From IMG/VR virus record IMGVR_UViG_3300042868_007959, positions 1-64,000 of that record: 64,000 nt of DNA, one strand, 5' to 3'. The first letter of the stretch is position 1. Each line of letters opens with the position of its first letter. This document shows positions 1 through 62,974 of this stretch, piece by piece. The notes under the pieces are model-generated. The model was given only the letters and a program-made list of their open reading frames with translations. It had not been told where the DNA came from and did not search any database. The position numbers were made by a program, and so were the translations under genes.

Positions 1-537
1 CCCTAATACTTTATTTTGCCCATCGGCAGCATGAAAATAATCTGAAATAAACGGATTGTATTTTATTTCTTCCGCCATACCTTTTAATGTAATTGGATCA
101 TCTGGTAACTCCTGCACTATACCACCAACACCAACTACTTGCTCTCTAGATGACATTTCACCTTCATCTCTAGTAGTTCTCATAATTTTATGATACCCCA
201 AACTAATATCAAAATTAATATCCCCACCCAAAAGAATGTCATTGGTATAACCAATAATTCCTGCAGTTTGGTTTTTCCTTCCTGTTTTGGTTCTACCATA
301 AACACCAAAGGCACCATTTTTATTATGTTTAATATTATGTCTGTTAGTGTGGAACCATATTTCTTTACCTACTAGTTCAGGTGATCCACCTTCTAAATAA
401 CCGTGTTGTGCCTTTGACGCAATAACTGGATCTGACATTCCTGAGTGCCAAGGTGGTGTTTCATTTAGTAATCTATCTCTCATCTCCATTAATAGATTTA
501 CCTTCCCTATGTTAATTCTTTTATCTTTAGTTCTCAT
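1..537 (-). CDS. Hypothetical protein, truncated by the window edge; leader ends RLLNE
   Basis: Manual translation from ATG at 537 (MRTKDKRINIGKVNLLMEMRDRLLNETPPW...) is open to base 1; TATTTATA motif at 542-550 upstream; absent from the ORF track. Confidence 0.8.
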   Translation of the reverse strand, partial: MRTKDKRINIGKVNLLMEMRDRLLNETPPWHSGMSDPVIASKAQHGYLEGGSPELVGKEIWFHTNRHNIKHNKNGAFGVYGRTKTGRKNQTAGIIGYTNDILLGGDINFDISLGYHKIMRTTRDEGEMSSREQVVGVGGIVQELPDDPITLKGMAEEIKYNPFISDYFHAADGQNKVLG

Positions 538-562
538 ATAATATAAATATCACTTATTTTAT

Positions 563-1492
563 TCAGTAAGACAATTTATCAAGTAAAGTTTCGTTAAACT
601 GATTCCAGTCTATGTCTCCATTACCACCATATCTGAAATGTCTATCTTCATTTATTCTTATTTTTTCATCTGGTAATATTGGGTTATCTCCTCCCCCATA
701 ATAATTCTCTTGTTCTGCGATCTTCCATAAAATTTCCTCGGGTAATGCGTAACCTGATTCTATTTCATCCATTAAAACTTCCCCAAAATACGAATTATCT
801 ACTAATTCACCTAACTCTATTTCACCTTCGTATTGTAATTCATCATAGTTTTTACCTTGGCTATCTACTTTATTTGTTAGTTTACCGTTAAATCTACTCA
901 AATAATCATTTATCGCATCTAAGATATCTGAATGTAATGAGTTGATATCTGCACTGTGCTGAGCATCTCCTGCAGCACAACCAATATCACTACCATACTC
1001 TGATTCTATAAACTCCTTAAAATCTTCTTCGTTTTCTTCACCATCTAAATTCTCTAAATATTTTTCTTTTAATATTTTCATATTATTTTGATCAATTTTA
1101 TCTATCAACCAATCATCAACATCAAAACATTCATAGTCATACCCATAATCGTAATCCCCTTCTAAAAAATTTTTCACAATTGTCTGTATACCATACTCAC
1201 CGTCATTAAAAAATTCTGAAATCTCATTTGCGGTATATATAACAGGTATATAGTAAGGTGTCCTATTCTTATATTCAGTTAAATATTTATAAATGACATT
1301 AAATTCTTTCTCCGTTGATCCAAGATCTAAATCTTTTAGGGTGTTTTTCATAAATTTTTCTGGATCAGAATCAAATATCTTAAATAATTTATTATAAACA
1401 TTTTCAGGAAATAATTCCCCAAATTTATCAATGTCCTCATCCGTAGAGTCATCACCAAACTCTAATAATATTTTTCTAATTGTACCCTTCAT
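563..1492 (-). CDS. Acidic hypothetical protein with leader MKGTIRKILLE
   Basis: ORF track; leader motif; D/E-rich body resembling 49884, 52665 and 57678. Confidence 0.8.
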   Translation of the reverse strand: MKGTIRKILLEFGDDSTDEDIDKFGELFPENVYNKLFKIFDSDPEKFMKNTLKDLDLGSTEKEFNVIYKYLTEYKNRTPYYIPVIYTANEISEFFNDGEYGIQTIVKNFLEGDYDYGYDYECFDVDDWLIDKIDQNNMKILKEKYLENLDGEENEEDFKEFIESEYGSDIGCAAGDAQHSADINSLHSDILDAINDYLSRFNGKLTNKVDSQGKNYDELQYEGEIELGELVDNSYFGEVLMDEIESGYALPEEILWKIAEQENYYGGGDNPILPDEKIRINEDRHFRYGGNGDIDWNQFNETLLDKLSY

Positions 1493-2057
1493 TATATTCT
1501 ATTTTTTCTATTAATCCATCTTGCATATATAGATAATCTTCATCAGTTAAATGATCCTCAAAACTTAATTTTGTATCATCATGTGCGTCATAACTATATA
1601 ATCCATACCATTTTATGAATTCCATAAAATCCCCAACTTTCCTTATATCTAATTTTCTTTGTATTTCTCCACTATGTTTAGTCATATCAATAATAAAAGG
1701 TTGTTCAGTATATGAAAAAAAATCTTCGTATACTATTTCTGGTATATAATCAATAAAATTATCTTTTTTCAGATTAAATGAGACTAAATCATAAACTTTC
1801 TCCGCATCAGTAACGGATAACCCAAAAGAATGTTGTATATGTTCTACAATTCTTTCTGCAAATATATTTTTTTTAGATAATTGAATATATAAACCACTTC
1901 TACTATCTGGAATTATTGGTTTACCGTCTAAATCAATAATAGTTGTTCTTACTTTTCCGTTCTCCAAAAAAAAATCATCCTTAATCATATTATAAATTCT
2001 CTTTATAATACCTTCTTGAGCAAATTCATTTAATATCTTCTTTATTTTGAAATTCAT
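1476..2057 (-). CDS. Hypothetical protein with leader MNFKIKKILNE
   Basis: ORF track; TATTTATA at 2072-2080. Confidence 0.8.
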   Translation of the reverse strand: MNFKIKKILNEFAQEGIIKRIYNMIKDDFFLENGKVRTTIIDLDGKPIIPDSRSGLYIQLSKKNIFAERIVEHIQHSFGLSVTDAEKVYDLVSFNLKKDNFIDYIPEIVYEDFFSYTEQPFIIDMTKHSGEIQRKLDIRKVGDFMEFIKWYGLYSYDAHDDTKLSFEDHLTDEDYLYMQDGLIEKIEYNEGYN

Positions 2058-2116
2058 TCTTATTATTTTTATATAAATATACTTAAATTATAATAAAATA
2101 TTTCTATATTTGTAGA

Positions 2117-2386
2117 ATGGAAAGAAAAAAAGTGAAAACTGAAACCATCAAAAACGATGACTTCAAAAAAAGAGAGGTTGTGGAAGAGAAAAAAACCATC
2201 ATTAAAAGTGTTTCTAATGACAGTAAAGTAAAATGGGAGAAGGTTAAAGGTGTTAGTGGGAAAATAATTAGATATAAAGTGGGAGATGTTACCAGAAAAG
2301 AAGAGTTATCTAAAAAAAAATACCGTCAACTTTATGTGGGGGTTGACGGTAATGATATTTATTTTTATTATGAAATTATAGAATAA
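2117..2386 (+). CDS. Hypothetical basic protein
   Basis: ORF track; TATATTTG promoter at 2105-2112. Confidence 0.75.
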   Translation: MERKKVKTETIKNDDFKKREVVEEKKTIIKSVSNDSKVKWEKVKGVSGKIIRYKVGDVTRKEELSKKKYRQLYVGVDGNDIYFYYEIIE

Positions 2387-2388
2387 TG

Positions 2389-2784: not shown

Positions 2785-2875
2785 AACCTATTTTATTTAA
2801 TAAATATATTCTTATTAAGAAAAATTTTTTTTATTAATAAATTTTTCGTATATTTGTATTATAAATTAATTGACT

Positions 2876-5197: not shown

Positions 5198-5482
5198 TTA
5201 ATAATATATATCTTCATTATTTTCTTCACCATAATTTCCACCGAAAGATTCTGTTTGTATCCAGTCATTAAATAGATTTGCGTATTCTTCATCAGACATC
5301 TCATCGACAACCCCACCTAACCAGTTTTCAAATTCCTCAACTCTGGATGGGGTAAGATCTCCCCAACCAAACTTAAATTTCATTATATGTAAAACGTTAT
5401 CAATATCTATTGTAGATTCTCCCAATAATTTTCGATTTGCCTCTAAAATAACTTGTCTTTTAATTTTTAACAGTCTGCTCAT
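5198..5482 (-). CDS. Hypothetical protein with leader (..RKLLGE)
   Basis: ORF track; TATTTAT at 5495-5502. Confidence 0.75.
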   Translation of the reverse strand: MSRLLKIKRQVILEANRKLLGESTIDIDNVLHIMKFKFGWGDLTPSRVEEFENWLGGVVDEMSDEEYANLFNDWIQTESFGGNYGEENNEDIYY

Positions 5483-5523
5483 TTCTTTTATATAATAAAT
5501 ATAACATTATTTGAAAAAAAATA

Positions 5524-6039
5524 TTAATCTAATGGATAATTAATATATAGCTCTATTATATCAATTAAACGAGTATTAGAAACAAACTCAGGTAAATTTG
5601 TCACTACAATATCTCTAATTATATCACTTATTTCATTATTTATTTCCCATCCATCCTTGTGATTGGAAATTAATGAATCAGTAATTTCATATAAATCCAT
5701 ATCATCATTATCATCATATACTTCTACTGTACCTTCAGGTGAAATATTGATGTAAAGTCTAACTACCTCTCCGAATAATGAATTCGCATCAATTGTTATA
5801 TATTTTTTTAGTTCGACTGAATGGATACCAAAATGAAAATCATAAGTACCCGTATTTGTGTAATCGGCAGTATGGAAATCTAATTTTCTTAGTTTTTTTA
5901 AAAACGATACTTCATATTTTAAAAAATTATTAAAATATTCTTTTTCATCTATTACAAAATCGGACAATTCAGATCGTCTTCCTAACCGATGTTCGGGATT
6001 TGAGAAATACCCTATTAATTTTTTTACATAGATACTCAT
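5524..6039 (-). CDS. Hypothetical protein
   Basis: ORF track; TATTTAT at 6045-6052. Confidence 0.75.
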   Translation of the reverse strand: MSIYVKKLIGYFSNPEHRLGRRSELSDFVIDEKEYFNNFLKYEVSFLKKLRKLDFHTADYTNTGTYDFHFGIHSVELKKYITIDANSLFGEVVRLYINISPEGTVEVYDDNDDMDLYEITDSLISNHKDGWEINNEISDIIRDIVVTNLPEFVSNTRLIDIIELYINYPLD

Positions 6040-6072
6040 ATTGAATAAATATGAAAATTTATGATAAAAAAT

Positions 6073-6103
6073 TTTGCCAATTAAAAAATAATATATATAT
6101 TTG
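6073..6103 (+). promoter_or_regulatory. Bacteroidota primary-sigma promoter
   Basis: TTTG-N19-TATATTTG. Confidence 0.85.
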
Positions 6104-6122
6104 TATTATAAAACAATCGACT

Positions 6123-6284
6123 ATGAAAACTATGGTAATTAGAAATCTAAATGGTACTGACAGAAAGGTAACTAAATTTTTGTTTATTCCTGAATTTATT
6201 AAAGGAAAAATAAAATGGTTAACATTTGTGACAATACACGAAGATTACGTTGACGGTGAATGGATTCAAATAAGAAAGAAATGA
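6123..6284 (+). CDS. Small hypothetical protein
   Basis: ATG 6123 downstream of a consensus promoter at 6073-6103. Confidence 0.65.
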   Translation: MKTMVIRNLNGTDRKVTKFLFIPEFIKGKIKWLTFVTIHEDYVDGEWIQIRKK

Positions 6285-7216: not shown

Positions 7217-7822
7217 TTAATTATTATATTTTAGTGTGAAAAAATCTCTACCATTTAAATATATTTCATGGTGATCCAATAAAGATCCATCACTTATCAG
7301 TCGTTCATAATCTTTTGTGGGTACGATAGACATTTTACTATTGTAAATTAAAATATTTTCTTTAAATCCATCTTCTATAAAATATTCAAATTCTGATATT
7401 TTTTCGAATTCACTTTCATATGTTTCTTGATCGTCACCAGTGATAATTGCGAAATTAAAGTTTTTATCGCTTAAAGGTAATGTTTCCTTTATAACATCCT
7501 TTCTTTTATACATTTTTTCCCAAACATTAAAGGCATCACCCCTAATATCTCCATCTCTAGAAATCATCAACCCATTAGGGTGGCAAAACATTAAAGCCAC
7601 TTCTAATACTGTAGGACCAAATCCTTTTTCTGCCGCAATCATTGGAAAATAATAGGTACCATCTTTATTTCTAGATAATCCTACAAATCCTAAAATTTCA
7701 CCGTTAACAAAGTCATACAATGATATATTCATATCATCATATATGGAAATTATAATATTTCTAGGTAGAGATGACATTTTTTTGTATTCTTCTTTTAATA
7801 TTCTCCGTATTATTTCTTTCAT
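7217..7822 (-). CDS. Leader + putative GNAT-fold protein
   Basis: IAAEKGFGPTVLEVAL (acetyl-CoA-loop-like), DAFNVWEK; leader MKEIIRRILKE. Confidence 0.45.
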   Translation of the reverse strand: MKEIIRRILKEEYKKMSSLPRNIIISIYDDMNISLYDFVNGEILGFVGLSRNKDGTYYFPMIAAEKGFGPTVLEVALMFCHPNGLMISRDGDIRGDAFNVWEKMYKRKDVIKETLPLSDKNFNFAIITGDDQETYESEFEKISEFEYFIEDGFKENILIYNSKMSIVPTKDYERLISDGSLLDHHEIYLNGRDFFTLKYNN

Positions 7823-7856
7823 ATAATAATAATAATAATAAATATATTTCTATATC

Positions 7857-9017
7857 CTAAAAAGGCATTTTTTCTGATATCTCTAACGATAATTCTTTAA
7901 TATATTTTTTAAAAATAATTTCTGCCAATTCCTCATCCACACCAAAATTATTTACGACATAATCAATATCCATTGAACCCATCATCCATCCACTCTTCCA
8001 TCTATGTACATCCCAAGGTTTATAAGTGTATTCTTCCCAAGGATACATAGGAAACTTTACTGAGGCAATTTTTTCTGACATAGTACCCCCATAATTTTTA
8101 TCCAATATTTCGTATTCAGTATCTTCTAACATTGTTTTTACAATGTAATCGTAGAACTTTTGTTTTCTATCTACTGATTCTGTAACGTAACTTTTACCTT
8201 CACCATCTTCAAATCCTATTAATTGACCAGTTTTAGAATCGTATTCTTTTTCCACCCAATCCCCATAGGCATCTTCATAATACACCAACAATTCTTTACC
8301 AGTGTGGGGAATTTCTAACATTACTTGTACATATTGTGGTAGTGAAACCCCCCCAACTATAAAAGAGTCAGACATATGGATTGTTATACGCCACCCATAA
8401 ATCATTCTAAAAATATCACCCCATTCTTCTATAGGGATATTGAAATTATGGAAATCAACCATATAAGGTTTTTTCAATAAAGGAATTATTTTTTTATAGT
8501 ATGAATTTTTATCTTCTACTGATTCTGTAATATTTTTTTTCGATCTAATATCATATATTTCACCATCTGATTTTTCTCGATAAATCAATTCGTTATTGGA
8601 ATTAAATTCACTTACTATCCAAAAACCATTATTTTCGTAGTATATTTGATTTTCATTTTGATCGTACCTATATATAGATAGGTTTCCCATATCTAACTCC
8701 TCATGTTCAATTAAATTACCATAGTTATCATATACCTTCCTAAGATAATCTCCATTCGGGTATTCTTTATATGTAAGGTGATCATTATCCCAACGGTAAA
8801 GTTCCCAATACCCATCAGGTGTTTCATAATATAGTGGATTATTATCTTTTTTATCTAATACCTCATCCATACCAGTTATGTAAACAGGTTTATTAAAAAC
8901 AATAGATAATATTTGATCATGACTTTTTTTATCGTGAAACCCCATTTCCGATAAATCTTTAAAATACGGTTTTTGAATTATCTTTGCGACTTTATTATAT
9001 ATATTTTCTTTTTCCAT
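7857..9017 (-). CDS. Three-module polyprotein (ITE|SV and VTE|SV junctions) with YYE..GxW..EYD beta-repeats
   Basis: KNITESVEDK and SYVTESVDRK junctions; the third module starts YDYIVKTMLEDT. Confidence 0.75.
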   Translation of the reverse strand: MEKENIYNKVAKIIQKPYFKDLSEMGFHDKKSHDQILSIVFNKPVYITGMDEVLDKKDNNPLYYETPDGYWELYRWDNDHLTYKEYPNGDYLRKVYDNYGNLIEHEELDMGNLSIYRYDQNENQIYYENNGFWIVSEFNSNNELIYREKSDGEIYDIRSKKNITESVEDKNSYYKKIIPLLKKPYMVDFHNFNIPIEEWGDIFRMIYGWRITIHMSDSFIVGGVSLPQYVQVMLEIPHTGKELLVYYEDAYGDWVEKEYDSKTGQLIGFEDGEGKSYVTESVDRKQKFYDYIVKTMLEDTEYEILDKNYGGTMSEKIASVKFPMYPWEEYTYKPWDVHRWKSGWMMGSMDIDYVVNNFGVDEELAEIIFKKYIKELSLEISEKMPF

Positions 9018-9053
9018 TATAATAATAAATATAGAGGAGAAAAGAAAATAAAA

Positions 9054-9605
9054 TTACCAGTTAAAATATAAATTTCTATCTATATCTATTCGTTTTCTAG
9101 TTTCTGGTAAAGGTAATCTTAATTCTTTAAGAATAATATTATGATTTGTTAAAATCTGATGTTCCAAATAATTAATACTAAGTCCTATACCACTTTTATA
9201 AGTATTAATTCCAGTAATTTCTAAATTTCTAATAAATTCATAACTATTTGGTAATAAAAAATCTGGTTCATAGGACTGACCGTAAAAATGTCTGTTAGGT
9301 ATATGTTGACTATATGACTTTTCCATCATTTCCCTATTGATATCATAAACCACTATATCCCATACATACCAAAAATATTCTTCTTTAACACATAAATTAT
9401 TGATGAAATGTTCATAAAATCTACCTATTATAGAAAAAAGGAAATTATTGGTAATATTTTTATCTTCAACACCCAAAGGATGTAAATTAAGTACGTCTAC
9501 CCCATCATCAAAAAATACATACCCCCAACGGTTTCCTGATGGGAAACGTTCTAATGAAAAATCGTGTAAACCTATTACTTTATCTGCGTATTTTTTTGGG
9601 TCCAT
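9054..9605 (-). CDS. Hypothetical protein
   Basis: ORF track; consensus host-type promoter at 9610-9641. Confidence 0.75.
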   Translation of the reverse strand: MDPKKYADKVIGLHDFSLERFPSGNRWGYVFFDDGVDVLNLHPLGVEDKNITNNFLFSIIGRFYEHFINNLCVKEEYFWYVWDIVVYDINREMMEKSYSQHIPNRHFYGQSYEPDFLLPNSYEFIRNLEITGINTYKSGIGLSINYLEHQILTNHNIILKELRLPLPETRKRIDIDRNLYFNW

Positions 9606-9609
9606 AAGA

Positions 9610-9641
9610 CAAATATAGACAAATAAAATAATAAAATCAAA
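9610..9641 (-). promoter_or_regulatory. Bacteroidota primary-sigma promoter
   Basis: TTTG-N20-TATATTTG. Confidence 0.85.
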
Positions 9642-13458: not shown

Positions 13459-13467
13459 TACTATAAA

Positions 13468-13497
13468 TAAAAAAACCTCACCGTTTCTGATGAGGTT
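13468..13497 (-). terminator. Intrinsic terminator
   Basis: AACCTCA-N10-TGAGGTT followed by a U-tract on the minus strand. Confidence 0.65.
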
Positions 13498-14414: not shown

Positions 14415-14561
14415 TTTCCTTATTTTATTTTTTATTATTATTGAACTCCGATTTGTTGGTATCTTTTCCAACTCAAATGACACAAGGACACTCGGAACCC
14501 AGTAACAAGGTTTCAATTATAAATATAAGGTATTTTTATTTTATTGTAAATAGTAAAATAT

Positions 14562-16830: not shown

Positions 16831-16896
16831 AACCTTTAATTTTATAATAAATATTCTAAAAATATTTTAAATCTTTTTTTAGTGAATATATGTAAT

Positions 16897-20173: not shown

Positions 20174-20231
20174 ATAAATATAGAAAAAATATTAAAAACT
20201 ATTTACTTTAATTAATTTTTTCATATTTATA
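20174..20231. promoter_or_regulatory. Divergent pair of putative late promoters (HK operon and L,D-transpeptidase-like gene)
   Basis: TATTTAT on minus at 20174-20181; ATATTTATA on plus at 20223-20231. Confidence 0.6.
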
Positions 20232-20888: not shown

Positions 20889-21013
20889 ATGATCCAAATA
20901 AAAAATCTCATCAAGAGGGGTTGGGGTGATTGAACAGTTCGGTCGTACAACTGATTAAATAGAAGATATCATATTACGAAAAATATTTTATTATACCAAA
21001 GTATTTATTTAAT

Positions 21014-23636: not shown

Positions 23637-23760
23637 ATCCATATTATAAATACCTTAATATTTGGAAACGTAAATTTTTCTGGAAAATTTTTAACCCTAT
23701 ATACCGTTCACCAGAAATGGGTGTTCATTGTCACTGAACAAACCTATGTATTGAACAATA

Positions 23761-24116: not shown

Positions 24117-24234
24117 ATTATAATTTTTTTATTATATAAATATACTATAATTCTCAAAATTAAAAATTTACTTGAAAAATTTTTGGGTAGTTGGGGAAGA
24201 ATGAAAATGGGGTCGACATTTGGAGAGATGAAAT

Positions 24235-24450: not shown

Positions 24451-24457
24451 CATACTA

Positions 24458-24489
24458 CAAATATACGAATAATATATTAGAAAATCAAA
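24458..24489 (-). promoter_or_regulatory. Bacteroidota primary-sigma promoter with no downstream ORF
   Basis: TTTG-N20-TATATTTG. Confidence 0.8.
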
Positions 24490-24499
24490 TTATAGGGCA

Positions 24500-24720: not shown

Positions 24721-24760
24721 ATGATACAATATTAAGTATATTATTTTAAAAAGTCAATAG

Positions 24761-25786: not shown

Positions 25787-26046
25787 TTTCTTTAATAATA
25801 TATTAATAAATATTAGGATATGTCAGAAATGATCCGTAACTTTATATTGTCAGTGGTTCATAACCGAGACGGGTCAGAGAAACAAGTTCTTCTCTAAGAG
25901 GGTGGACTCCGACCTGTCTTATATATTTATAATTAGTTCACCTATGATCAACCGACCTCTGATCTCTTCATACTATATATCTATATGTACGCCTGTTTCG
26001 GTATTACCACCAACATAACAAAGGTAGTAATAATAATCGACATATC

Positions 26047-27120: not shown

Positions 27121-27135
27121 ACCTATAAATATATG

Positions 27136-27198: not shown

Positions 27199-27215
27199 AT
27201 AAATAAATATACGTA

Positions 27216-29117: not shown

Positions 29118-29135
29118 AATAAAACTATTATACCA

Positions 29136-29143
29136 CAAATATA
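29136..29143 (-). promoter_or_regulatory. -7 element upstream of the NUMOD4-HNH gene
   Basis: TATATTTG. Confidence 0.65.
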
Positions 29144-29213
29144 ATAAAATAATTCATATAAACAAAAAAAACCCCATATTTCTATAGAGGTTCTAATATT
29201 AGTTATTGTAGAT

Positions 29214-33298: not shown

Positions 33299-33330
33299 CA
33301 AATATATGATTTTTATAACACATAATCAAA
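33299..33330 (-). promoter_or_regulatory. Bacteroidota primary-sigma promoter for the 33273-29214 operon
   Basis: TTTG-N20-TATATTTG. Confidence 0.85.
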
Positions 33331-35101: not shown

Positions 35102-35175
35102 ACATATAAATATATTACAAAATAAAAAAACCCCTACATTTATTTAAAGGTTTATATTAAAGTAATAGTGATTAT

Positions 35176-36710: not shown

Positions 36711-36762
36711 ATATAATTTATTATTTAAACAAAATTAATGATAATATATTTAATTAACAAAT

Positions 36763-39786: not shown

Positions 39787-39823
39787 ATATATAAATATAT
39801 TGTTTTCTTAAAAAAATGGACAT

Positions 39824-40041: not shown

Positions 40042-40125
40042 TTTTTTATTTTTAGTTCTTTATTATTATTATATAAATATAGTAGAATATGTAAAACTAT
40101 ATACCATTTAATAGTTACGTCTGTT

Positions 40126-40369: not shown

Positions 40370-40504
40370 TTATTTTTTAGAAACTTTTTCTATTTTTTTA
40401 TAATGTGTTTTACCATAGGCATCACAATCAGCCTTTTTAGTAGTTTTACAACTAATTACAATCGTTAAAGTAACGATTAATAAGTAAACTATTTTACGAT
40501 TCAT
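40370..40504 (-). CDS. Small putative lipoprotein (44 aa)
   Basis: Manual translation MNRKIVYLLIVTLTIVISCKTTKKADCDAYG...; overlaps the sigma stop. Confidence 0.6.
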   Translation of the reverse strand: MNRKIVYLLIVTLTIVISCKTTKKADCDAYGKTHYKKIEKVSKK

Positions 40505-41021
40505 ATACTTTGTTTTTTAATTTTTTTATTATATTATTTTTAGCTCTATGGAGATTTGATTTAGATGTACCTTCATGTATATTTAATCTATCCGATATTT
40601 CTTTATGTGTTAAATCCTCATAGTAATACATAAGTATTGCAGTTTTATGTGATGCGGGTAATGTATCTAAAACTAAACTTATATCATTTAATTTTTCTTC
40701 ATTATTATTATCATCTTCTTCAACAGGTGAATCTACATTGTCACAATACTCGATAGGGTACTTTTTTTTCCTTAAAAAATCTATAGACATATTCTTAAAA
40801 ATTCTGTAGATCCAACCATCAAAACTACCTTTACCGTCATACTTATCAATACAACTATAAAGTTTTATGAAACCATTTTGTAGTATGTCTTCCGCATCCA
40901 TATCATTTTTTATATACCTCTTTACTGTAGTATACGCAATTTTCCTATAACATCGATACATTTCTGATTGTGAAATTTTATCACCCCTTAAACAACCTTC
41001 GATTACCTCATTTAAATCCAT
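40494..41021 (-). CDS. ECF RNA polymerase sigma factor, Bacteroidota type
   Basis: DAEDILQNGFIK, SFDGWIYRI..N..IDFLRK (region 2); LP..AILMYYYEDLTHKEIS..EGTSKSNLHRAK (region 4). Confidence 0.92.
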   Translation of the reverse strand: MDLNEVIEGCLRGDKISQSEMYRCYRKIAYTTVKRYIKNDMDAEDILQNGFIKLYSCIDKYDGKGSFDGWIYRIFKNMSIDFLRKKKYPIEYCDNVDSPVEEDDNNNEEKLNDISLVLDTLPASHKTAILMYYYEDLTHKEISDRLNIHEGTSKSNLHRAKNNIIKKLKNKVYES

Positions 41022-43072: not shown

Positions 43073-43254
43073 AGTATTGTGTATAAAATATCGTTATATA
43101 TTATAAATATAAGGATATGACACTATATCTCAATTGATTCTAAGAAAAAAACTATGTTATTTATCATAGATACACTTTACATGAATATTTTCACATATAT
43201 TATAATTTTTATTTAATAAACTAACTATAATGGGTATTAAGTTATAAATATAAT

Positions 43255-44221: not shown

Positions 44222-44279
44222 AATTTTTTTTATAATTATAAGTATTTATTATTATAAAATAAAGTATTATTCTACAAAT

Positions 44280-46844: not shown

Positions 46845-46879
46845 ATCAAAAGGTTTTAGACAAATATAAAAATAATTTT

Positions 46880-47299
46880 CTAATTATCCAAATTTATTTC
46901 ATTAATTAATTTATGTAATTTATGATCATTCAGTCCCAACCTTTCTTTACACTCTAAAAGTTCCGAACTATTCATTTCATAATTCTGATAATAACTTTCA
47001 TATGACACTAGTAGATTATTCATTAACTCCACAAAATCATAAAATACAGTTCTATCTCTAGTATTATTTAATATAATTAATGGACCTTCTTTATCCCCTC
47101 TATGTACTTTTTCTAATAATAAGTGGGAACTACTCTTTATAATACTAACTTTTAATTGATCAAAAATGTGATCAATATTGACTCTTTGATCCTTAATATC
47201 ATTTATTTTTTTACGTAAAGTAGTTAAGTATTCCTCATCTAAAGTATGTTCTTTACCTAAATGTTTTTTTAAGGCATTAATTAGATATTCATTTTCCAT
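46880..47299 (-). CDS. Hypothetical protein
   Basis: ORF track. Confidence 0.7.
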   Translation of the reverse strand: MENEYLINALKKHLGKEHTLDEEYLTTLRKKINDIKDQRVNIDHIFDQLKVSIIKSSSHLLLEKVHRGDKEGPLIILNNTRDRTVFYDFVELMNNLLVSYESYYQNYEMNSSELLECKERLGLNDHKLHKLINEINLDN

Positions 47300-48461: not shown

Positions 48462-48515
48462 ATTAATCTTTTAATTATAAATATATCACCTAACTAAAAA
48501 GTATTAGATAAAGGC

Positions 48516-49378: not shown

Positions 49379-49410
49379 TAAAGTTAAGTATAATTTATTA
49401 AACTGCCAAA
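49379..49410 (-). promoter_or_regulatory. Bacteroidota-type promoter (variant -7)
   Basis: TTTG-N20-TAACTTTA. Confidence 0.7.
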
Positions 49411-49806: not shown

Positions 49807-49838
49807 TAAATTTAAGTCTTTTTTTTCAAACTACCAAA
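49807..49838 (-). promoter_or_regulatory. Bacteroidota-type promoter (variant -7)
   Basis: TTTG-N20-TAAATTTA. Confidence 0.7.
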
Positions 49839-49883
49839 CATTTTAATCTTTTTTTTTAATATTTATTGTATATTATTATTTAT

Positions 49884-51701: not shown

Positions 51702-52022
51702 TTATTTATCCTTTTTAGGTGAAGGTAAATATTTTAAATCTGTATAACTCATATAGATATATTCTGTTACCATATCTACATTACTGTAATATATATTCCA
51801 TTTATCATACCCGAAATAGTCAGGTATAAATTCCTCATCGTCCACATATTCTAAAAAGTCTTGACCATCAGTTACATAGTGTTCATAACACCAGTTATAG
51901 TAATCACTGTCAACTAACTCCCTATAGTAGTCATCACCATCTCCCTCTACTTTAAAAACTAATGTAAGAATATTATCCAAATCACAGATAATATCATAAA
52001 CCTCTTGTATTGTGTAATTCAT
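51702..52022 (-). CDS. Hypothetical acidic protein
   Basis: ORF track; TATTTAT at 52037-52044. Confidence 0.7.
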   Translation of the reverse strand: MNYTIQEVYDIICDLDNILTLVFKVEGDGDDYYRELVDSDYYNWCYEHYVTDGQDFLEYVDDEEFIPDYFGYDKWNIYYSNVDMVTEYIYMSYTDLKYLPSPKKDK

Positions 52023-52045
52023 AATATATTTTGAAAATAAATATA

Positions 52046-52614: not shown

Positions 52615-52664
52615 ATTTTTTAGTTTTAAGTATATGGATTTTTTATTTAAATGTCAATATACTT

Positions 52665-59029: not shown

Positions 59030-59524
59030 ATGGAAAAAGGAGTTTTAAATTTATTGAACGAACAAATATGGTTCGAAAATAGAGCGTCTCATTATTATTT
59101 AAACCTATCGGTTTTATGTGAGTCAAAAGGTTTTAAAGGTATATCTAAATTTTTTAGAGAACAGTCTAATGAAGAAAGAGAACATATGTTAAAGATATGT
59201 GATTACATTTTAGAACGAGATCAAAAACCAATTATTCCGTCAAATACGTTTTTAGATGATAGTGAATTAGATTTCGATAACATCTTAAAGATATTTGAGG
59301 ATAGTCTTTTTAACGAAAGAGAAATCACTAATTCATTTCATAAAATTATCATAACTTGTAGAGAATTAGGGGATTTCACAACTGAAAACTTCATCCAATG
59401 GTTTATAGAAGAACAAAGAGAAGAAGAATCTAAATTTAAGTCCCTAATTGATGAATTAAAGATTATAGGTAGTAACACCACAAGTGGGTCTGCATTATAT
59501 TTATTTGATAAAAATATTTCTTAA
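59030..59524 (+). CDS. ftnA: Non-heme ferritin
   Basis: LNEQIWFENRASHYY, FFREQSNEEREHM, WFIEEQREEE ferroxidase residues. Confidence 0.9.
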   Translation: MEKGVLNLLNEQIWFENRASHYYLNLSVLCESKGFKGISKFFREQSNEEREHMLKICDYILERDQKPIIPSNTFLDDSELDFDNILKIFEDSLFNEREITNSFHKIIITCRELGDFTTENFIQWFIEEQREEESKFKSLIDELKIIGSNTTSGSALYLFDKNIS

Positions 59525-59709
59525 ATTATTTTTACATAAATATATATCATATCTAAAGATTCAACAAACTTTATATCACCACCTAACCCCTTTTTTTGTG
59601 CCTTAATTTTATAACTATCATAGATAACATCAAAATTATCTTCTAATTCTTCTGTCATTATTTTCCCTAAATAGAATAATGCTTTATCGTTTTGAACTTC
59701 ATTTTTCAT
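59521..59709 (-). CDS. Small hypothetical protein
   Basis: ORF track; TATTTATA at 59726-59734. Confidence 0.65.
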   Translation of the reverse strand: MKNEVQNDKALFYLGKIMTEELEDNFDVIYDSYKIKAQKKGLGGDIKFVESLDMIYIYVKII

Positions 59710-59743
59710 TTCTCACCCATTTAGATATAAATATCTTAAAGGG

Positions 59744-61699
59744 TTAAAATGGTCTATTGATATTTATAATGGGAGTTCTATTTTCAACTACCTCTTCTGT
59801 TGGTAAATCATCTACACCCCAGTATTCTCCTATCATATCTTGTTCTACTTCAGGTACTTCTTCTAATCGGATGTAAGGGTTATGTACCGCATTTATCTGG
59901 AAAATTGAGGACGTATTATTTTCACTACTTTCATCTTTTAATGATATTAAAAATCCCCTATTCAATAGTTCTATATCCCCAAAAGATTTTATTTTTTTAT
60001 CGTACCCATCAGTAAACCTCTTTTTATTTATTTTATTAACCAATAGATTACCAATAGTCTTATGGTATTCAGTAGTTTCTTTATTACAATACGATAATAT
60101 CTGGATCATTCTAAACATTAACTGATTATCTTCTAATTCTATTTCCAAAGCTGACATATTATTAGGTGTGATAATCACAAATATTTTAGTCTTACCACTA
60201 GCAATCTTCAATTTATAATTCTGAGCATCATTATTAATACAATTCTTAAGTTTATTACCTGCCCATCTCATATCCAACTCAGAAGTTAACTCCTTAATTT
60301 TTATATCATATGGTAGGTTTAACTCATCAAAAACAATTGGTTCAATTATATTGGCTGAATATTTTTCTTTTTCTTTATCTAATTCTTGTTTCATATTTTC
60401 ATATGTAGGTTTAATCAAAATATTCCTACTTAATAATGATTTTTGTAGTAATGGTGATACCCATTCTCCATCTGAATTAAATAATTTATTAATACTCTTT
60501 ACAAAATTATAGGATTCTTGTGCATTCATTTTAAATTTAAAAATGATATATAGTAACCATCTTTCAGAATCTACCATTTTATCAATATATTGTATATGTG
60601 ATAAATCAAAATCACAATTATGGTATTGGTTATTTGTTAGACAAAGCATCTTAGAGAAATGACTATTTTTTAATATCAATTCTGCCTTAAACTTTTGTTT
60701 TTTGTTAATATCATTTTTAGTTAAATTATATGCCCCCATAAATGTTAACGGGTTAAATGATAATTGTTCTAAAATACCAAATATTAGTTCATTCTTTTTA
60801 TTATATTTTTTAGGTGTAAGTGACCATATAATATCATTATATTTCGCCCAATTACCTAATACCTCTGTTGGTATAGTATATTTGGGGTTTAACCACTTAA
60901 CACTTTCAGGAATTACTACATCATTAGGATTGGATCTATAAGCCCAAGTAGATTTCTTATGATCAAAGTATTTAATTAATGAGAAATACTCCTTCAATTT
61001 AGAATAGTATTTCATATACATATCTTTATACTTAGAACCAAAATATACTCCAAATGAACGTCTAGACATTCTAACAATATTCTCTACTATTAAGGGTTGA
61101 CTTAATAACTCCATACACGAATCTACATTACAAAAACAATTTAGTTCGTCCATCTTTTTAAACAATCTTATTGCAGTATGTGCAGGTGTGTATATCGCAG
61201 TAACCTCTAATTGTTTATTTTCTAAAAAACTTTTAAAGTCCTCAGTATATATAAGAATGTTAGTTGTTAAATCAATACCAACTTGACAACAATTAAAATC
61301 GAACCCATTTAAAATGTATTCATAATCTGTTTTGGGTGAAGACAGTGAAGAATTCTTCCTAATATAAATGTTATTCAGATACCCATCTCTATCTACTTTA
61401 ACTATTTGGTATGTGGTGTTAGTATCATACGCCATTTTAGTAACCATATACCCATCACCTTCAATGTTCAATGAGTTAGTTCTAACTGGCGCATTTGACG
61501 ATGGACTATCATATCCCTTATCCTCAATAAATATATCTAAATCGTTTATAGGGTAATTACCACCCCAAACCATATTTAAGATAGTATTCGCCACTGCACC
61601 ACCAGCCAAAAATCCGCTACTAGGGATGTTGTCATACTTACTCAATTCAATTAGTATCTCACTAACTAAAGATTTTTTTTCTAAAACATTATTCATCAT
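59744..61699 (-). CDS. Nucleotidyltransferase (CCA/poly(A)-polymerase-like head) with a PcfJ-like C-terminal domain
   Basis: FLAGGAV..NDLDIF; FDFNCCQ; DMRWAGNKLKNCI..ALEI. Confidence 0.7.
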   Translation of the reverse strand: MMNNVLEKKSLVSEILIELSKYDNIPSSGFLAGGAVANTILNMVWGGNYPINDLDIFIEDKGYDSPSSNAPVRTNSLNIEGDGYMVTKMAYDTNTTYQIVKVDRDGYLNNIYIRKNSSLSSPKTDYEYILNGFDFNCCQVGIDLTTNILIYTEDFKSFLENKQLEVTAIYTPAHTAIRLFKKMDELNCFCNVDSCMELLSQPLIVENIVRMSRRSFGVYFGSKYKDMYMKYYSKLKEYFSLIKYFDHKKSTWAYRSNPNDVVIPESVKWLNPKYTIPTEVLGNWAKYNDIIWSLTPKKYNKKNELIFGILEQLSFNPLTFMGAYNLTKNDINKKQKFKAELILKNSHFSKMLCLTNNQYHNCDFDLSHIQYIDKMVDSERWLLYIIFKFKMNAQESYNFVKSINKLFNSDGEWVSPLLQKSLLSRNILIKPTYENMKQELDKEKEKYSANIIEPIVFDELNLPYDIKIKELTSELDMRWAGNKLKNCINNDAQNYKLKIASGKTKIFVIITPNNMSALEIELEDNQLMFRMIQILSYCNKETTEYHKTIGNLLVNKINKKRFTDGYDKKIKSFGDIELLNRGFLISLKDESSENNTSSIFQINAVHNPYIRLEEVPEVEQDMIGEYWGVDDLPTEEVVENRTPIININRPF

Positions 61700-61880
61700 C
61701 TTTATTGTTTTTATAGTTCTTATACAAAAAAAAGGAAGGTATTGTTATACCTAAAAATAAAATAATATACAATATTATTGGGTAAATTATTATTATAGTT
61801 AAAAATAGGCAAAAACATATGACACCTATTAAAGAATAAAATCTAATTTTACCCCTATCTATTTTATCAAAATCAAACAT
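61689..61880 (-). CDS. Small membrane protein
   Basis: Long hydrophobic segment. Confidence 0.65.
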   Translation of the reverse strand: MFDFDKIDRGKIRFYSLIGVICFCLFLTIIIIYPIILYIILFLGITIPSFFLYKNYKNNKDDE

Positions 61881-61881
61881 A

Positions 61882-62850
61882 TTACATTATATCTTCTAAA
61901 TAATTTTTCACCTCGTTGGAGATTTCTCTTCTACTCGCACCAATTGTAATTAAATCAACTACCATATCTACAATTTCATCTGATATGGTATTGATGAAAT
62001 CATCATCATTATCGTCATCATCACCTATAAATGGTGAATAACTATTACTATATGTTTCAGTAATTATTTTTTTCTTATGAATATATTTTATATTACCCAA
62101 ATGAGAAATTAATTTTTCACCTGCAATGAGAGAATCTGATACTTCACTGATAACCACATATTCTTGATTAGTATGTTGTTTGTAATAACCACAACCCAAA
62201 TTAAGACAGTTGAAGTCGTATTTAGTTGCCAATTGATTAACGTCAGTAAATGGATCATTACTAAATTTAGTATAACCAGATTCGTTTAAAGTCGCCTTAA
62301 TTTTATCCTTAAAATCTAAATCGAAAAGATTAACTCCCCAACAAACTTCACTTATCCAATTATTAGATGGTGCATCAAACTGAATTGCGTACCCCACATT
62401 ATCAAAGAAGGCATCATCAGATTCTTTAGAACCTTTCATACCTATCTCTTCTTCAACAAAGAAAGCCCCTTTTAAGTTATCGAATTTGTTGAAGAGTTCT
62501 AAACAAACAAAGACACCACACTTATCATCCCCACCAATACCTGTTTGTATTTCTGTAGTGGGATGAAAGGCAATTAGATTATCGTCATTTTCTTTAATGA
62601 TTAGACGTTCTTTATTTTCAATTAAGGTAATATGTGATCTATGAACTGTATCCATATGTGAAACGACACAAGGGAAATGTTCTTGCGGATAGGTTACCAT
62701 ACCCTTAGTAAGATAGAGATTACCTTTTTTATCGGTGTAATACTCTATACCGTTAGTTTTTGCAAACTCTATTATGTAGTCTCTAACCATACTTTCATCA
62801 CCAGATATTGATGGTAGGGACAAAACTTCTTTTAAAAAATCTAAATTCAT
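61882..62850 (-). CDS. Zinc peptidase, M20/M28/M42 clan
   Basis: SISGDE, SHMDTV, GGDDKCG, VEEEIG, QFD. Confidence 0.88.
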   Translation of the reverse strand: MNLDFLKEVLSLPSISGDESMVRDYIIEFAKTNGIEYYTDKKGNLYLTKGMVTYPQEHFPCVVSHMDTVHRSHITLIENKERLIIKENDDNLIAFHPTTEIQTGIGGDDKCGVFVCLELFNKFDNLKGAFFVEEEIGMKGSKESDDAFFDNVGYAIQFDAPSNNWISEVCWGVNLFDLDFKDKIKATLNESGYTKFSNDPFTDVNQLATKYDFNCLNLGCGYYKQHTNQEYVVISEVSDSLIAGEKLISHLGNIKYIHKKKIITETYSNSYSPFIGDDDDNDDDFINTISDEIVDMVVDLITIGASRREISNEVKNYLEDIM

Positions 62851-62864
62851 ATCTTATTTTTAGA

Positions 62865-62896
62865 CAAATATATGGAATAGATTCCGAATAACCAAA
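62865..62896 (-). promoter_or_regulatory. Bacteroidota primary-sigma promoter
   Basis: TTTG-N20-TATATTTG. Confidence 0.85.
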
Positions 62897-62974
62897 TTTT
62901 TATTGATTTATTATTTACAAAATAATATTAATACTGATATTTATAATAATAACATTTTAAAAAAACTTAATCAA

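What the first reader, a model, noticed from the sequence alone, without database searches (positions are those of the whole stretch)
537..62944. Two promoter classes that sort the genes: host TAnnTTTG versus a TATTTAT motif that is the reverse complement of the T4 late promoter
Seen: TTTG-N19-20-TAnnTTT(G/A) precedes leaderless small-gene operons and non-coding segments (6073, 9610, 24458, 33299, 49379, 49807, 62865). (A/G)TATTTAT(A) lies in sense orientation upstream of leader, polyprotein, lysis and membrane genes on both strands (for example 20223, 21002, 44243, 49859 and 62937 on plus). Established: TTTG/TAnnTTTG is the Bacteroidota primary-sigma consensus; T4 late promoters are a lone TATAAATA. 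Inference: TATTTAT is this phage's late promoter, which supports virion association of the leader proteins. Caveat: the motif is AT-only in an AT-rich genome.
Basis: partly seen in the sequence, partly recalled or inferred. Interest (0 to 1): 0.6.

Follow-up and report, generated by a model that had tools for sequence, protein, structure and literature searches.

The report
Phage late promoter box TATTTAT
This uncultured lake-water jumbo phage has two real promoter types, a host-style Bacteroidota one before small early genes and tRNAs and a phage-specific ATATTTAT box before structural and lysis genes. The same box is used by two cultured relatives and is most likely read by a diverged copy of the T4 late sigma factor gp55.

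Summary
The window is the first 64 kb of a 254-kb, 29% GC lake-metagenome phage with a T4 gp23-type capsid.

In co-directional intergenic gaps genome-wide:
- ATATTTAT occurs 35 times in sense and 2 in antisense (dinucleotide shuffles give about 5).
- TATATTTG occurs 15 times in sense and 0 in antisense.
- De novo, these are the two most strand-biased 8-mers.

The host-type class is TTTG-N19/20-TA(T/A)(A/T)TTT(G/A). The phage class is a T-tract, about 11 nt, then ATATTTAT, with no -33 element. It sits 2-7 or 12-20 nt before the start codon.

The classes rarely coincide: 69 genes have their own phage box, 33 a host-type promoter, and 4 have both. The phage box precedes the endolysin, the tail sheath, the capsid operon and large virion-like genes.

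The box is kept in IMG/VR relatives despite diverged flanks. It also lies before terminase, portal, sheath and tube genes in Flavobacterium phage immuto and Microcystis phage Mel-JY01. Those two genomes lack canonical sigma factors but share this phage's gp55-like protein.

The "reverse complement of T4" framing is incidental, because in direct orientation TATTTATA matches TATAAATA at 6 of 8 positions. Transcription start sites and timing are untested, since no RNA data exist.

The parts
543..550 (-). Phage-class box ATATTTAT, 5 nt before the start of the gene at 1-537
2073..2080 (-). Phage-class box ATATTTAT, 15 nt before the gene at 1476-2057
2800..2807 (-). Phage-class box, 15 nt before the gene at 2389-2784
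5495..5502 (-). Phage-class box, 12 nt before the gene at 5198-5482
6045..6052 (-). Phage-class box, 5 nt before the gene at 5524-6039
6073..6103 (+). Host-type promoter TTTG-N19-TATATTTG. It lies inside the longest ORF call (6051-6284), so the true start is probably the ATG about 19 nt downstream of the box
7838..7845 (-). Phage-class box, 15 nt before the gene at 7217-7822
9025..9032 (-). Phage-class box, 7 nt before the gene at 7857-9017
9610..9641 (-). Host-type promoter TTTG-N20-TATATTTG, followed by 4 nt and the ATG of the gene at 9054-9605. Predicted leaderless
   Evidence: The 4-nt spacing rule is from PMC6847099
13451..13458 (-). Phage-class box, 5 nt before the gene at 12105-13445. 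It follows a hairpin plus T-run, and a second TTATTTAT lies at 13463-13470
14519..14526 (-). Phage-class box, 2 nt before the TTG start of the gene at 13524-14516. The start codon is uncertain
16847..16854 (-). Phage-class box, 16 nt before the endolysin gene at 16006-16830. A terminator-like hairpin lies upstream
20174..20181 (-). Phage-class box, 4 nt before the ATG of the gene at 18571-20169. Box and spacing are kept in 25 of 28 diverged orthologous upstream regions
20223..20230 (+). Phage-class box, 15 nt before the gene at 20246-20842. Kept in 13 of 14 orthologous regions
21001..21008 (+). Phage-class box GTATTTAT, 5 nt before the gene at 21014-21397
23646..23653 (-). Phage-class box GTATTTAT, 3 nt before the gene at 21384-23642 (752 aa)
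24136..24143 (-). Phage-class box, 19 nt before the gene at 23814-24116
24458..24489 (-). Host-type promoter TTTG-N20-TATATTTG, followed by 4 nt and an ATG that opens only a 2-codon frame. It heads a G/C-tract-rich stretch (24144-24453) with no convincing ORF
25806..25813 (-). Phage-class box, 19 nt before the gene at 24761-25786
27125..27132 (-). Phage-class box, 4 nt before the gene at 26047-27120. Further boxes at 27199-27210 lie upstream in a 512-nt gap
29136..29166 (-). Host-type promoter TTTG-N19-TATATTTG before the HNH/NUMOD homing-endonuclease-like gene at 28404-29138
33299..33330 (-). Host-type promoter, 25 nt before 33109-33273, which is the first gene of a run of small genes
35106..35113 (-). 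Phage-class box, 4 nt before the gene at 34166-35101, after a hairpin plus T-run
36730..36761 (-). Host-type promoter (TAATTTTG), 19 nt before 36468-36710, heading a small-gene operon
39791..39798 (-). Phage-class box, 4 nt before the gene at 39256-39786
40073..40080 (-). Phage-class box, 31 nt before the gene at 39871-40041
40494..41021 (-). Gene for a 175-aa ECF-size sigma factor with regions 2 and 4. A weak TTATTTAT lies 2 nt upstream and a TATCTTTG lies 20 nt upstream
43103..43110 (-). Phage-class box, 30 nt before the gene at 41078-43072 (664 aa, with GEVED and CUB domains)
44242..44249 (+). Phage-class box GTATTTAT, 30 nt before the gene at 44280-44705
46861..46892 (-). Host-type promoter, 16 nt before 46572-46844. 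The operon continues to the IMPDH/GMP-reductase-family gene at 44700-45809
48477..48484 (-). Phage-class box, 15 nt before the gene at 47856-48461
49379..49410 (-). Host-type variant TTTGGCAGTTT...TAACTTTA, 22 nt before the DUF932 gene at 48562-49356
49807..49838 (-). Host-type variant TTTGGTAGTTT...TAAATTTA, 22 nt before the gene at 49398-49784
49859..49866 (+). Phage-class box, 17 nt before the first ATG (about 49884) of the 610-aa ORF that ends at 51698
52037..52044 (-). Phage-class box, 14 nt before the gene at 51702-52022
59727..59734 (-). Phage-class box, 17 nt before the gene at 59521-59709
62865..62896 (-). Host-type promoter TTTG-N20-TATATTTG, 14 nt before 61882-62850. The operon includes the PcfJ-like gene at 59744-61699
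62937..62944 (+). Phage-class box, 30 nt before an ATG that opens a short ORF ending at 63076

Best explanation
The phage uses host core RNA polymerase with two specificity regimes.

(1) Early. The host primary sigma of a Bacteroidota host reads TTTG-N19/20-TA(T/A)(A/T)TTT(G/A) promoters. These head operons of small genes, homing-endonuclease and metabolic genes, the tRNA arrays, and the operon that carries the phage's own RpoD-like sigma. Where 4 nt separate the box from ATG, the mRNA should be leaderless.

(2) Late. A phage-encoded, diverged homologue of T4 gp55 (244 aa, genome 241722-242456, outside the window) directs the core enzyme to a lone -10-like box, ATATTTAT. A T-tract lies about 11 nt upstream and there is no -33 element. 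This box heads the lysis and virion genes. Transcripts are predicted to start about 4-7 nt downstream of the box, which puts the start at or next to the AUG in the 4-nt-spacing cases.

Shown: the motifs, their strand and position bias, their conservation, their gene associations, and the presence of the sigma genes.

Inferred: promoter activity itself, late timing, and which sigma reads which box.
For: Enrichment and orientation.
- ATATTTAT occurs 35 times in sense and 2 in antisense in co-directional gaps, z about 13 against dinucleotide shuffles. TATATTTG is 15 versus 0.
- These are the top two strand-biased 8-mers found de novo.
- The box is depleted inside genes on both strands.

Architecture.
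- The T-tract at -16 to -12 persists in the 55 boxes that have no upstream terminator hairpin. Seven boxes sit 11-15 nt after a hairpin plus T-run.

Sorting.
- 69 genes have their own phage box, 33 have a host-type promoter, and 4 have both.
- Phage-box units have a median gene length of 202 aa, against 126 aa for host-type units (p = 1e-7).
- Phage boxes precede the endolysin, the tail sheath and a 1714-aa appendage-like protein, and the operon of the gp23-type capsid gene.
- Host-type promoters precede the operon of the RpoD-like sigma and the tRNA arrays.

Conservation.
- The box and its 4-nt spacing are kept upstream of orthologues whose flanks have diverged.
- It is kept in 25 of 28 and 13 of 14 orthologous regions, against 0 of 90 for internal operon genes.
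- Across 80 related loci it is 146 sense versus 12 antisense.

Cultured relatives.
- Flavobacterium phage immuto: 27 sense versus 4 antisense, 2.6 expected.
- Microcystis phage Mel-JY01: 9 sense versus 0 antisense, 1.9 expected.
- In both, the box precedes terminase, portal, sheath, tube and hub genes.
- Neither complete genome has any Sigma70_r2 match. Both keep the homologue of the 244-aa protein.

gp55 link.
- phrog_234 'late sigma transcription factor', E = 4e-5.
- The only PDB hit is T4 gp55, 7d7c_F.
- hhalign against T4 gp55 gives E = 4e-4, colinear over about 145 residues.
- T4 gp55 finds this protein as its best hit in the proteome, E = 4e-4.
- The T4 pocket residues F86, Y97 and R57 are kept (PMC7892883).

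No phage RNA polymerase was found.
Against: - There is no transcription start site or expression data. Only DNA runs hold this phage.
- The gp55 homology is weak: hhalign probability is 36%, the AlphaFold model has pLDDT 61, and Foldseek found nothing significant.
- No gp33 or gp45 homologue was found, so the T4 activation mechanism cannot simply be transferred.
- The contig is an estimated 78% complete.
- Some phage boxes lie among early-looking small genes (34-66 kb).
- Boxes only 2-3 nt from the called start codon cannot produce that reading frame unless the start codon or the start-site spacing is different from what was assumed.
- The box shares ATATTT with the host -7 element, so dual recognition is not excluded.
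- Most downstream genes have no known function, so 'late' rests on a few hallmark genes plus the annotated relatives.
Confidence: 0.7

Rival explanations
1. The ATATTTAT box is a promoter, but it is read by one of the phage's canonical sigma factors rather than by the gp55-like protein. The candidates are the early-expressed 265-aa RpoD-like sigma (genome 125314-126111) and the 175-aa ECF-size sigma in the window (40494-41021).
For: Both are clear sigma-70-family proteins with regions 2 and 4. The RpoD-like gene sits right behind two host-type promoters, so it would be made early. That is the timing expected of a sigma that switches on later genes.
Against: Immuto and Mel-JY01 use the same box before their structural genes. 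Yet their complete genomes have no Sigma70_r2 match and no tblastn hit to either protein. The box has no -35/-33 partner that a region-4-bearing sigma would normally need.
Confidence: 0.13
2. The box is a weak or -33-independent variant of the host primary-sigma -7 element. On this reading both classes are read by host holoenzyme, and any temporal sorting comes from other factors such as activators, anti-sigma proteins or DNA modification.
For: ATATTTAT and (T)ATATTTG(T) differ by one base. With 4-nt spacing the box occupies the same -12 to -5 register as TAnnTTTG. Flavobacterium johnsoniae promoters also have AT-rich elements near -18 and -28 and a weak -33 (PMC6847099). Immuto's early promoters end in TATATTTA rather than G.
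Against: The box is equally enriched before structural genes of a cyanobacterial phage (Mel-JY01), whose host sigma has a different specificity. It lacks the nearly invariant G-5 and the T-12 A-11 register. The two classes rarely co-occur and they partition the genes.
Confidence: 0.1
3. The box is not a promoter. It would instead be an RNA-level or DNA-binding element in 5' regions, for example an AU-rich translation enhancer, an RNase processing site, or an operator for a phage regulator.
For: It lies close to start codons. Bacteroidota lack Shine-Dalgarno-led initiation and favour A/U-rich leaders (PMC6847099). No start-site data exist.
Against: - The distance to the start codon ranges from 2 to more than 40 nt and differs by lineage: 4 or 12-20 nt here, 14-22 nt in immuto, and 22-35 nt with Shine-Dalgarno-like sites in Mel-JY01.
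- The box often follows terminator hairpins directly.
- It is absent before internal operon genes.
- It is depleted on the antisense strand of genes as well, which an RNA-level signal would not explain.
Confidence: 0.05
4. The motif is a by-product of AT-rich composition.
For: The genome is 29% GC and the box is made only of A and T.
Against: None of 500 dinucleotide shuffles reaches the observed counts. The sense to antisense ratio is 35:2. The box is kept in 34-36% GC relatives.
Confidence: 0.02

Closest known systems
Bacteriophage T4 late promoters (TATAAATA, read by gp55 with gp33 and the gp45 sliding clamp)
   Same: - It is a lone AT-only -10-like octamer without a -35 element, placed before virion and lysis genes.
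- The phage has a gp23-type capsid and a tail sheath.
- A gp55-like protein is encoded that keeps the T4 pocket residues F86, Y97 and R57.
- In direct orientation 6 of 8 box positions are identical, including the A that T4 gp55 flips at -12 and the A at -8 (PMC7892883).
   Different: - The consensus is (A)TATTTAT(A/T), with TT where T4 has AA. T4's own box is not enriched here in sense orientation.
- There is an extra T-tract about 11 nt upstream.
- The sigma is 244 aa, with an added C-terminal helical domain of about 80 aa.
- T4 pocket residues H95 and T99 are replaced.
- No gp33 or gp45 was detected. The cultured relative immuto has a family-A polymerase replisome rather than a T4-type one.
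- Some boxes sit only 4 nt from the ATG.
Bacteroidota primary-sigma promoters (-33 TTTG / -7 TAnnTTTG; Bayley 2000; Baez 2019, PMC6847099)
   Same: The host-type class fits this consensus in sequence and in 19-20 nt spacing. Box plus 4 nt plus ATG matches the published 4-5 nt distance between the box and the start site.
   Different: - The phage sites are unusually uniform: TATATTTG, with a clear TTTG.
- Some end in A instead of G.
- One subgroup has an extended TTTGGCAG(A/T)TT at -33.
- The phage-specific class is not part of this family.
Group 2 jumbo phages of Iyer et al. 2021 (PMC7824862)
   Same: These phages have no RNA polymerase of their own and have a gp23-type capsid. They carry both a minimal gp55-type sigma and an RpoD-like sigma. 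The group includes phages of Bacteroidetes.
   Different: That study describes the proteins, not promoter motifs. It reports gp33 orthologues in group 2, and none was found here.
Flavobacterium phage vB_FspM_immuto_2-6A (NC_055915) and Microcystis phage Mel-JY01 (PP395634)
   Same: They are the nearest cultured relatives by capsid protein (40-42% identity). They share the gp55-like protein (25-26% identity to this phage's protein over the whole alignment; 30-33% in local tblastn matches). They have the same nTATTTAT(A) box before structural genes.
   Different: - Their genomes are smaller (160 and 190 kb).
- They have no RpoD-like or ECF-like sigma.
- Their leaders are longer.
- Mel-JY01 infects a cyanobacterium and shows Shine-Dalgarno-like sites.
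- In the papers I could search, no promoter analysis of either phage turned up.

Membership tests
Bacteroidota primary-sigma promoter (-33/-7) | -7 element TAnnTTTG (TAHHTTTG) | tested here: met
   TATATTTG is 15 sense versus 0 antisense in co-directional gaps. About 30 bipartite sites were found genome-wide. Some end in A instead of G.
Bacteroidota primary-sigma promoter (-33/-7) | -33 TTTG at about 19-20 nt upstream of the -7 element | tested here: met
   TTTG-N18-21-TAnnTTTG occurs 10 times in sense in upstream gaps, against 0.1 expected. The spacing is mostly 19 or 20 nt.
Bacteroidota primary-sigma promoter (-33/-7) | Transcription starts 4-5 nt after the G of the -7 element | not testable with these tools
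   No RNA run holds the phage. The box plus 4 nt plus ATG arrangement at 9610 and 24458 is consistent with the rule.
Bacteroidota primary-sigma promoter (-33/-7) | The host is a member of Bacteroidota | tested here: inconclusive
   The phage is uncultured and comes from lake water. Its nearest cultured relative infects Flavobacterium, but another relative infects Microcystis.
T4-type late promoter / gp55 system | Lone -10-like AT-rich octamer without a -35 element | tested here: met
   The logo shows information only in ATATTTAT and in a T-tract at -17 to -13. No TTTG partner is present.
T4-type late promoter / gp55 system | Consensus TATAAATA in sense orientation | tested here: not met
   TATAAATA in sense occurs 3 times against 4.5 expected in co-directional gaps. 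The box here is TATTTAT(A/T), which matches at 6 of 8 positions.
T4-type late promoter / gp55 system | Located before late (virion, lysis) genes | tested here: met
   Here it precedes the endolysin, the sheath and the capsid operon. In immuto and Mel-JY01 it precedes terminase, portal, sheath, tube, hub and tape-measure genes.
T4-type late promoter / gp55 system | gp55 homologue encoded | tested here: met
   The support is weak but mutually consistent:
- phrog_234, E = 4e-5.
- The only PDB hit is T4 gp55.
- hhalign E = 4e-4, probability 36%.
- Reciprocal best hit, E = 4e-4.
T4-type late promoter / gp55 system | gp33 co-activator | tested here: inconclusive
   phmmer found no significant hit (best E = 0.07). 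The C-terminal domain of the 244-aa protein does not resemble gp33. The sequences may be too diverged, and the contig is 78% complete.
T4-type late promoter / gp55 system | gp45 sliding clamp as activator | tested here: inconclusive
   PF09116 gave no match. The contig is incomplete. Immuto's annotation shows no T4-type clamp.
T4-type late promoter / gp55 system | Late timing and dependence on phage protein synthesis | not testable with these tools
   No expression data exist.

The most novel reading that the evidence does not exclude
A widespread clade of T4-superfamily phages shares a re-specified late-transcription module. The clade comprises abundant uncultured freshwater jumbo phages, Flavobacterium phage immuto and Microcystis phage Mel-JY01.

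In this module a 230-255-aa gp55-type sigma with an added C-terminal domain would recognise ATATTTAT, with replacements in the pockets that read the -9 and -8 bases. It would work without gp33 and without a sliding clamp, and on the core polymerases of two different bacterial phyla. That would make it a portable, self-sufficient minimal sigma and promoter pair.
Probability: 0.3. Interest if true: 0.65.

Novelty: new variant of a known kind. Interest (0 to 1): 0.5.

Why it matters
- It gives a concrete regulatory map, early versus late, for a very abundant but uncultured family of lake phages whose proteins are mostly unannotatable. The boxes can therefore be used to predict which unknown genes are late.
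- It shows that the T4 late-promoter system has a diverged branch with a different box that is conserved across hosts of two phyla.
- It names a specific, testable sigma and promoter pair in two cultured systems.
- A short orthogonal promoter with its own small sigma would also be useful for engineering Bacteroidota, where standard promoters do not work.

Tried and rejected
- Megablast of the window against GenBank phages found no match.
- PHROG and Pfam scans of about 60 proteins left most large proteins blank, so functional sorting rests on a few hallmark genes.
- The sequencing-run search returned only DNA runs from lake-water metagenomes. No transcription start site test was possible, and read laying was not used.
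- The AlphaFold2 model of the gp55-like protein has mean pLDDT 61. Foldseek against the PDB found nothing at E <= 0.001. Many of the top weak rows are sigma factors, but this is not evidence.
- I tested whether the extra C-terminal domain is a fused gp33. hhalign probability was 0.2%, so the idea is rejected at sequence level.
- gp45 C-domain, T7-type and multisubunit RNA polymerase Pfam searches gave no match. The T7-type control rang in no control genome, so that negative is weak.
- Rfam and tRNA scans of the window found nothing.
- The non-coding stretch after the promoter at 24458 folds no better than shuffles, z = -0.6.
- The uncultured 484-kb phage LR756508 has 43% capsid identity and a weak gp55-like hit. 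Its structural module has no TATTTAT enrichment, so the box is not universal in the wider group.
- Literature searches for the box, for promoters of immuto or Mel-JY01, and for late promoters in Bacteroidetes phages found no prior description. The library is incomplete.
- A possible third motif was seen but has too few sites to judge.

Full report
**What the window is**

The window is bases 1-64000 of a single 253,879-bp IMG/VR virus contig. The contig is 29% GC, has about 340 ORFs, mostly on the minus strand, and has an estimated completeness of 78%. Public runs that hold it are all lake-water metagenome DNA; none is RNA.

The major capsid protein is of the T4 gp23 type (PF07068, E = 4e-62, at genome 248884-250641). 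A tail sheath lies at 198074-200923. By capsid protein the nearest cultured relatives are Flavobacterium phage vB_FspM_immuto (40% identity), Microcystis phage Mel-JY01 (42%) and, further off, Rhodothermus phage RM378. Most proteins have no PHROG or Pfam match.

**Checking the observation**

I took the longest non-overlapping ORFs as genes and tested upstream gaps of at least 25 nt, read in the sense orientation of the downstream gene. With no prior motif, the two most strand-biased 8-mers are ATATTTAT (56 regions in sense, 22 in antisense) and TATATTTG (19 versus 4).

Divergent gaps blur orientation, so I repeated the test on co-directional gaps only and compared with 500 dinucleotide-preserving shuffles:

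| Motif | Sense | Antisense | Expected (shuffles) |
|---|---|---|---|
| ATATTTAT | 35 | 2 | 5.1 +/- 2.3 |
| TATATTTG | 15 | 0 | 0.8 |
| TTTG-N18-21-TAnnTTTG | 7 | 0 | 0.1 |

The window alone gives the same picture: [AG]TATTTAT is 15 sense versus 1 antisense in co-directional gaps. T4's own box, TATAAATA, is not enriched in sense orientation (3 observed, 4.5 expected).

The phage box is also positionally constrained. Its 3' end peaks 2-7 nt and 12-20 nt before the start codon. Inside coding sequence it is rarer than synonymous-codon shuffles predict on both strands (17 versus 26.5 in sense, 19 versus 35.6 in antisense). That is the pattern expected if stray promoters are selected against.

**Anatomy of the two classes**

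The host-type class is TTTG, then 19 or 20 nt, then TA(T/A)(A/T)TTT(G/A). About 30 sites were found genome-wide, 10 of them in the window. In Flavobacterium johnsoniae the -7 element spans T-12 to G-5 and transcription starts 4-5 nt after the G (PMC6847099). So the sites where the box is followed by 4 nt and then ATG (9610, 24458, and 67649 and 130380 outside the window) predict leaderless transcripts. The other sites have 14-25 nt leaders.

The phage class has A before TATTTAT in 61 of 73 cases, a T-tract at -17 to -13 from the first T, no TTTG partner, and A-richness 5-7 nt after the box. The T-tract persists in the 55 boxes that have no upstream terminator-like hairpin. Eleven boxes follow such a hairpin, seven of them at 11-15 nt, so the terminator's T-tail doubles as the T-tract.

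**Do the classes sort the genes?**

Largely yes. 69 genes have their own phage box, 33 have a host-type promoter, and only 4 have both. When labels are propagated down operons, phage-box units hold 157 genes with a median length of 202 aa, and host-type units hold 103 genes with a median of 126 aa (Mann-Whitney p = 1.4e-7).

Phage boxes precede:
- the endolysin (window 16006-16830);
- the tail sheath and a 1714-aa appendage-like protein;
- the operon containing the capsid gene;
- a GEVED/CUB-domain protein.

Host-type promoters precede:
- runs of small ORFs;
- an HNH/NUMOD endonuclease, a DUF932 protein and an IMPDH-family gene;
- the operon with a metallophosphatase, a Rad50-like protein and the phage RpoD-like sigma;
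- the two tRNA arrays, 28 tRNAs at 75.6-77.6 kb and 91.1-94.4 kb.

The sorting is not perfect. Several phage boxes lie among small genes at 34-66 kb.

**Conservation**

A search with the protein of window 18571-20169 returned 80 IMG/VR loci at 61-93% identity. Upstream of its orthologues, nTATTTAT is kept with the same 4-nt spacing to the ATG. The rest of the intergenic sequence changes, and the upstream neighbour varies between a divergent gene and a terminator hairpin.

I counted non-redundant, diverged upstream regions:

| Window gene | Regions that keep the box |
|---|---|
| 18571-20169 | 25 of 28 |
| 20246-20842 | 13 of 14 |
| 16006-16830 (endolysin) | 6 of 26 |
| genes inside operons | 0 of 90 |

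Over all 80 loci, co-directional gaps hold ATATTTAT 146 times in sense and 12 in antisense, and TATATTTG 40 versus 2. These loci are related to one another, so the counts are not independent.

**Cultured relatives**

In the annotated immuto genome (35% GC), (A/C)TATTTAT(A) lies 14-22 nt before terminase, portal, PhoH, sheath, tube, baseplate hub, tape measure, tail-spike and other late genes. It also lies before the endolysin/holin cluster and groES/groEL. In co-directional gaps the count is 27 sense versus 4 antisense, against 2.6 expected. Its early small genes each carry a near-identical GTTG-N19-TATATTTAGG promoter.

In 41.5 kb around the capsid gene of Mel-JY01, TATTTAT is the commonest 7-mer in the 60 nt before genes. 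It occurs 9 times in sense and 0 in antisense, against 1.9 expected. It lies before terminase, the portal-position gene, tube and others, here with 22-35 nt leaders that carry Shine-Dalgarno-like sites.

So the box travels with the phage lineage across host phyla. That argues against it being a variant of the Bacteroidota host promoter.

**Which factor reads the box?**

The genome encodes three sigma-like proteins:
- an ECF-size sigma in the window (40494-41021);
- a 265-aa RpoD/SigA-like sigma with regions 1.2, 2 and 4 (125314-126111);
- a 244-aa protein (241722-242456) with only a sub-threshold region-2 match.

The 244-aa protein links to T4 gp55 in four ways:
- it matches phrog_234, 'late sigma transcription factor', at E = 4e-5;
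- its only PDB hit is T4 gp55, 7d7c_F, at E = 0.11;
- a profile built from it and its immuto and Mel-JY01 homologues aligns colinearly with T4 gp55 (columns 11-163 against residues 5-153, E = 4e-4, probability 36%);
- T4 gp55 finds it as its best hit in this proteome, at E = 4e-4, with the next hit at 0.03.

It is highly conserved in metagenomes; all 120 listed homologues are at least 76% identical.

The complete immuto and Mel-JY01 genomes have no Sigma70_r2 match at all, but both keep this protein. By this phylogenetic profile the gp55-like protein is the best candidate reader of the box. The RpoD-like and ECF-like sigmas are extras of the jumbo lineage whose targets are unknown. No phage RNA polymerase was detected.

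**Relation to the T4 late promoter**

TATTTATA is literally the reverse complement of TATAAATA. However, the element acts in sense orientation, and the two octamers are near-palindromic. Aligned directly they agree at 6 of 8 positions and differ only in the central pair (AA in T4, TT here).

In the T4 complex, gp55 flips the non-template A at -12, -9 and -8 into pockets lined by N13, L54, R57, F86, H95, Y97 and T99 (PMC7892883). Direct alignment keeps A at -12 and -8 and changes -9. In the sequence alignments:
- F86, Y97 and R57 are kept;
- H95, which lines the -9 pocket, is Y or F in this clade;
- T99, which lines the -8 pocket, is G, Q or S.

This fits a shifted specificity, but it is inference from a weak alignment.

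No gp33 or gp45 homologue was found. Immuto has a family-A polymerase replisome. Clamp-coupled activation as in T4 should therefore not be assumed.

**Verdict**

That inference is that a host-type early class and a phage-specific late class exist side by side.

Still inferred are promoter activity, timing and the identity of the sigma.

In the searchable literature I found no description of this box. I rate it a new variant of the known T4-type late-promoter system.

Noticed in passing
window 40494-41021 (-); genome 125314-126111 (-): The phage encodes two canonical sigma-70-family factors in addition to the gp55-like protein. One is a 175-aa ECF-size sigma and the other a 265-aa RpoD/SigA-like sigma. 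The 265-aa type has thousands of metagenomic homologues of about 265 aa on phage-sized contigs. Their target promoters are unknown, and both genes are absent from immuto and Mel-JY01.
   Followed up: partly
window 52632-52657 (-); genome 110817-110842 (-) and 253296-253321 (-): Three intergenic sites share TTGACA-N15-(T)CC(A/G)TAT before genes that have neither of the two main motifs. This may be a third, rare promoter class, for example for one of the extra sigmas. Three sites cannot be told from chance (0.5 expected per window).
   Followed up: partly
window 24144-24760: This stretch has no convincing ORF and is rich in G and C runs, which is unusual in a 29% GC genome. It lies downstream of a host-type promoter whose ATG opens only a 2-codon frame. 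It has no Rfam match and its fold is no better than shuffles (z = -0.6).
   Followed up: partly
window 49379-49410 and 49807-49838 (-); genome 75414, 99643, 119624, 229965: A subgroup of host-type promoters has an extended -33 region, TTTGG(C/T)AG(A/T)TT, and often ends in TTTA instead of TTTG. This could be a binding site for a regulator, or a middle-class variant.
   Followed up: no
genome 75.6-77.6 kb and 91.1-94.4 kb (L001 15643-17586; L002 13149-16417): There are 28 tRNA genes in two minus-strand arrays, including one with a 4-base anticodon call. Host-type promoters lie at 92510, 94597 and 95019.
   Followed up: partly
genome upstream of 198074-200923 and of 201576-203279: The same upstream sequence, at least 45 nt plus the phage box and the bases after it, is repeated before the tail-sheath gene and before a 567-aa gene 3 kb away. 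This is a duplicated promoter and 5' region.
   Followed up: no
L100 16800-27000 (immuto record 66.8-77 kb): Immuto's early region has about 20 small genes. Each is preceded by a nearly identical promoter-plus-leader cassette, GTTG-N19-TATATTTAGGTATCAATAATTAAAAC.
   Followed up: no
L104 (LR756508, 151961-193520): The structural module of this 484-kb uncultured phage has 43% capsid identity but lacks the TATTTAT box. CTATAAA is the top sense-biased 7-mer (4 versus 0), which hints at yet another late-box variant.
   Followed up: no
window 28404-29138 (-): An HNH/NUMOD homing-endonuclease-like gene has its own host-type promoter. A second HTH-HNH gene lies at genome 93599-94138, next to the tRNA array.
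   Followed up: no
genome 241722-242456, residues about 150-240: The gp55-like protein carries a C-terminal helical domain of about 80 aa that T4 gp55 lacks. It is the best-predicted part of the model (pLDDT 85-92) and is conserved in immuto and Mel-JY01 (the Y..IRE motif). It does not resemble gp33.
   Followed up: partly
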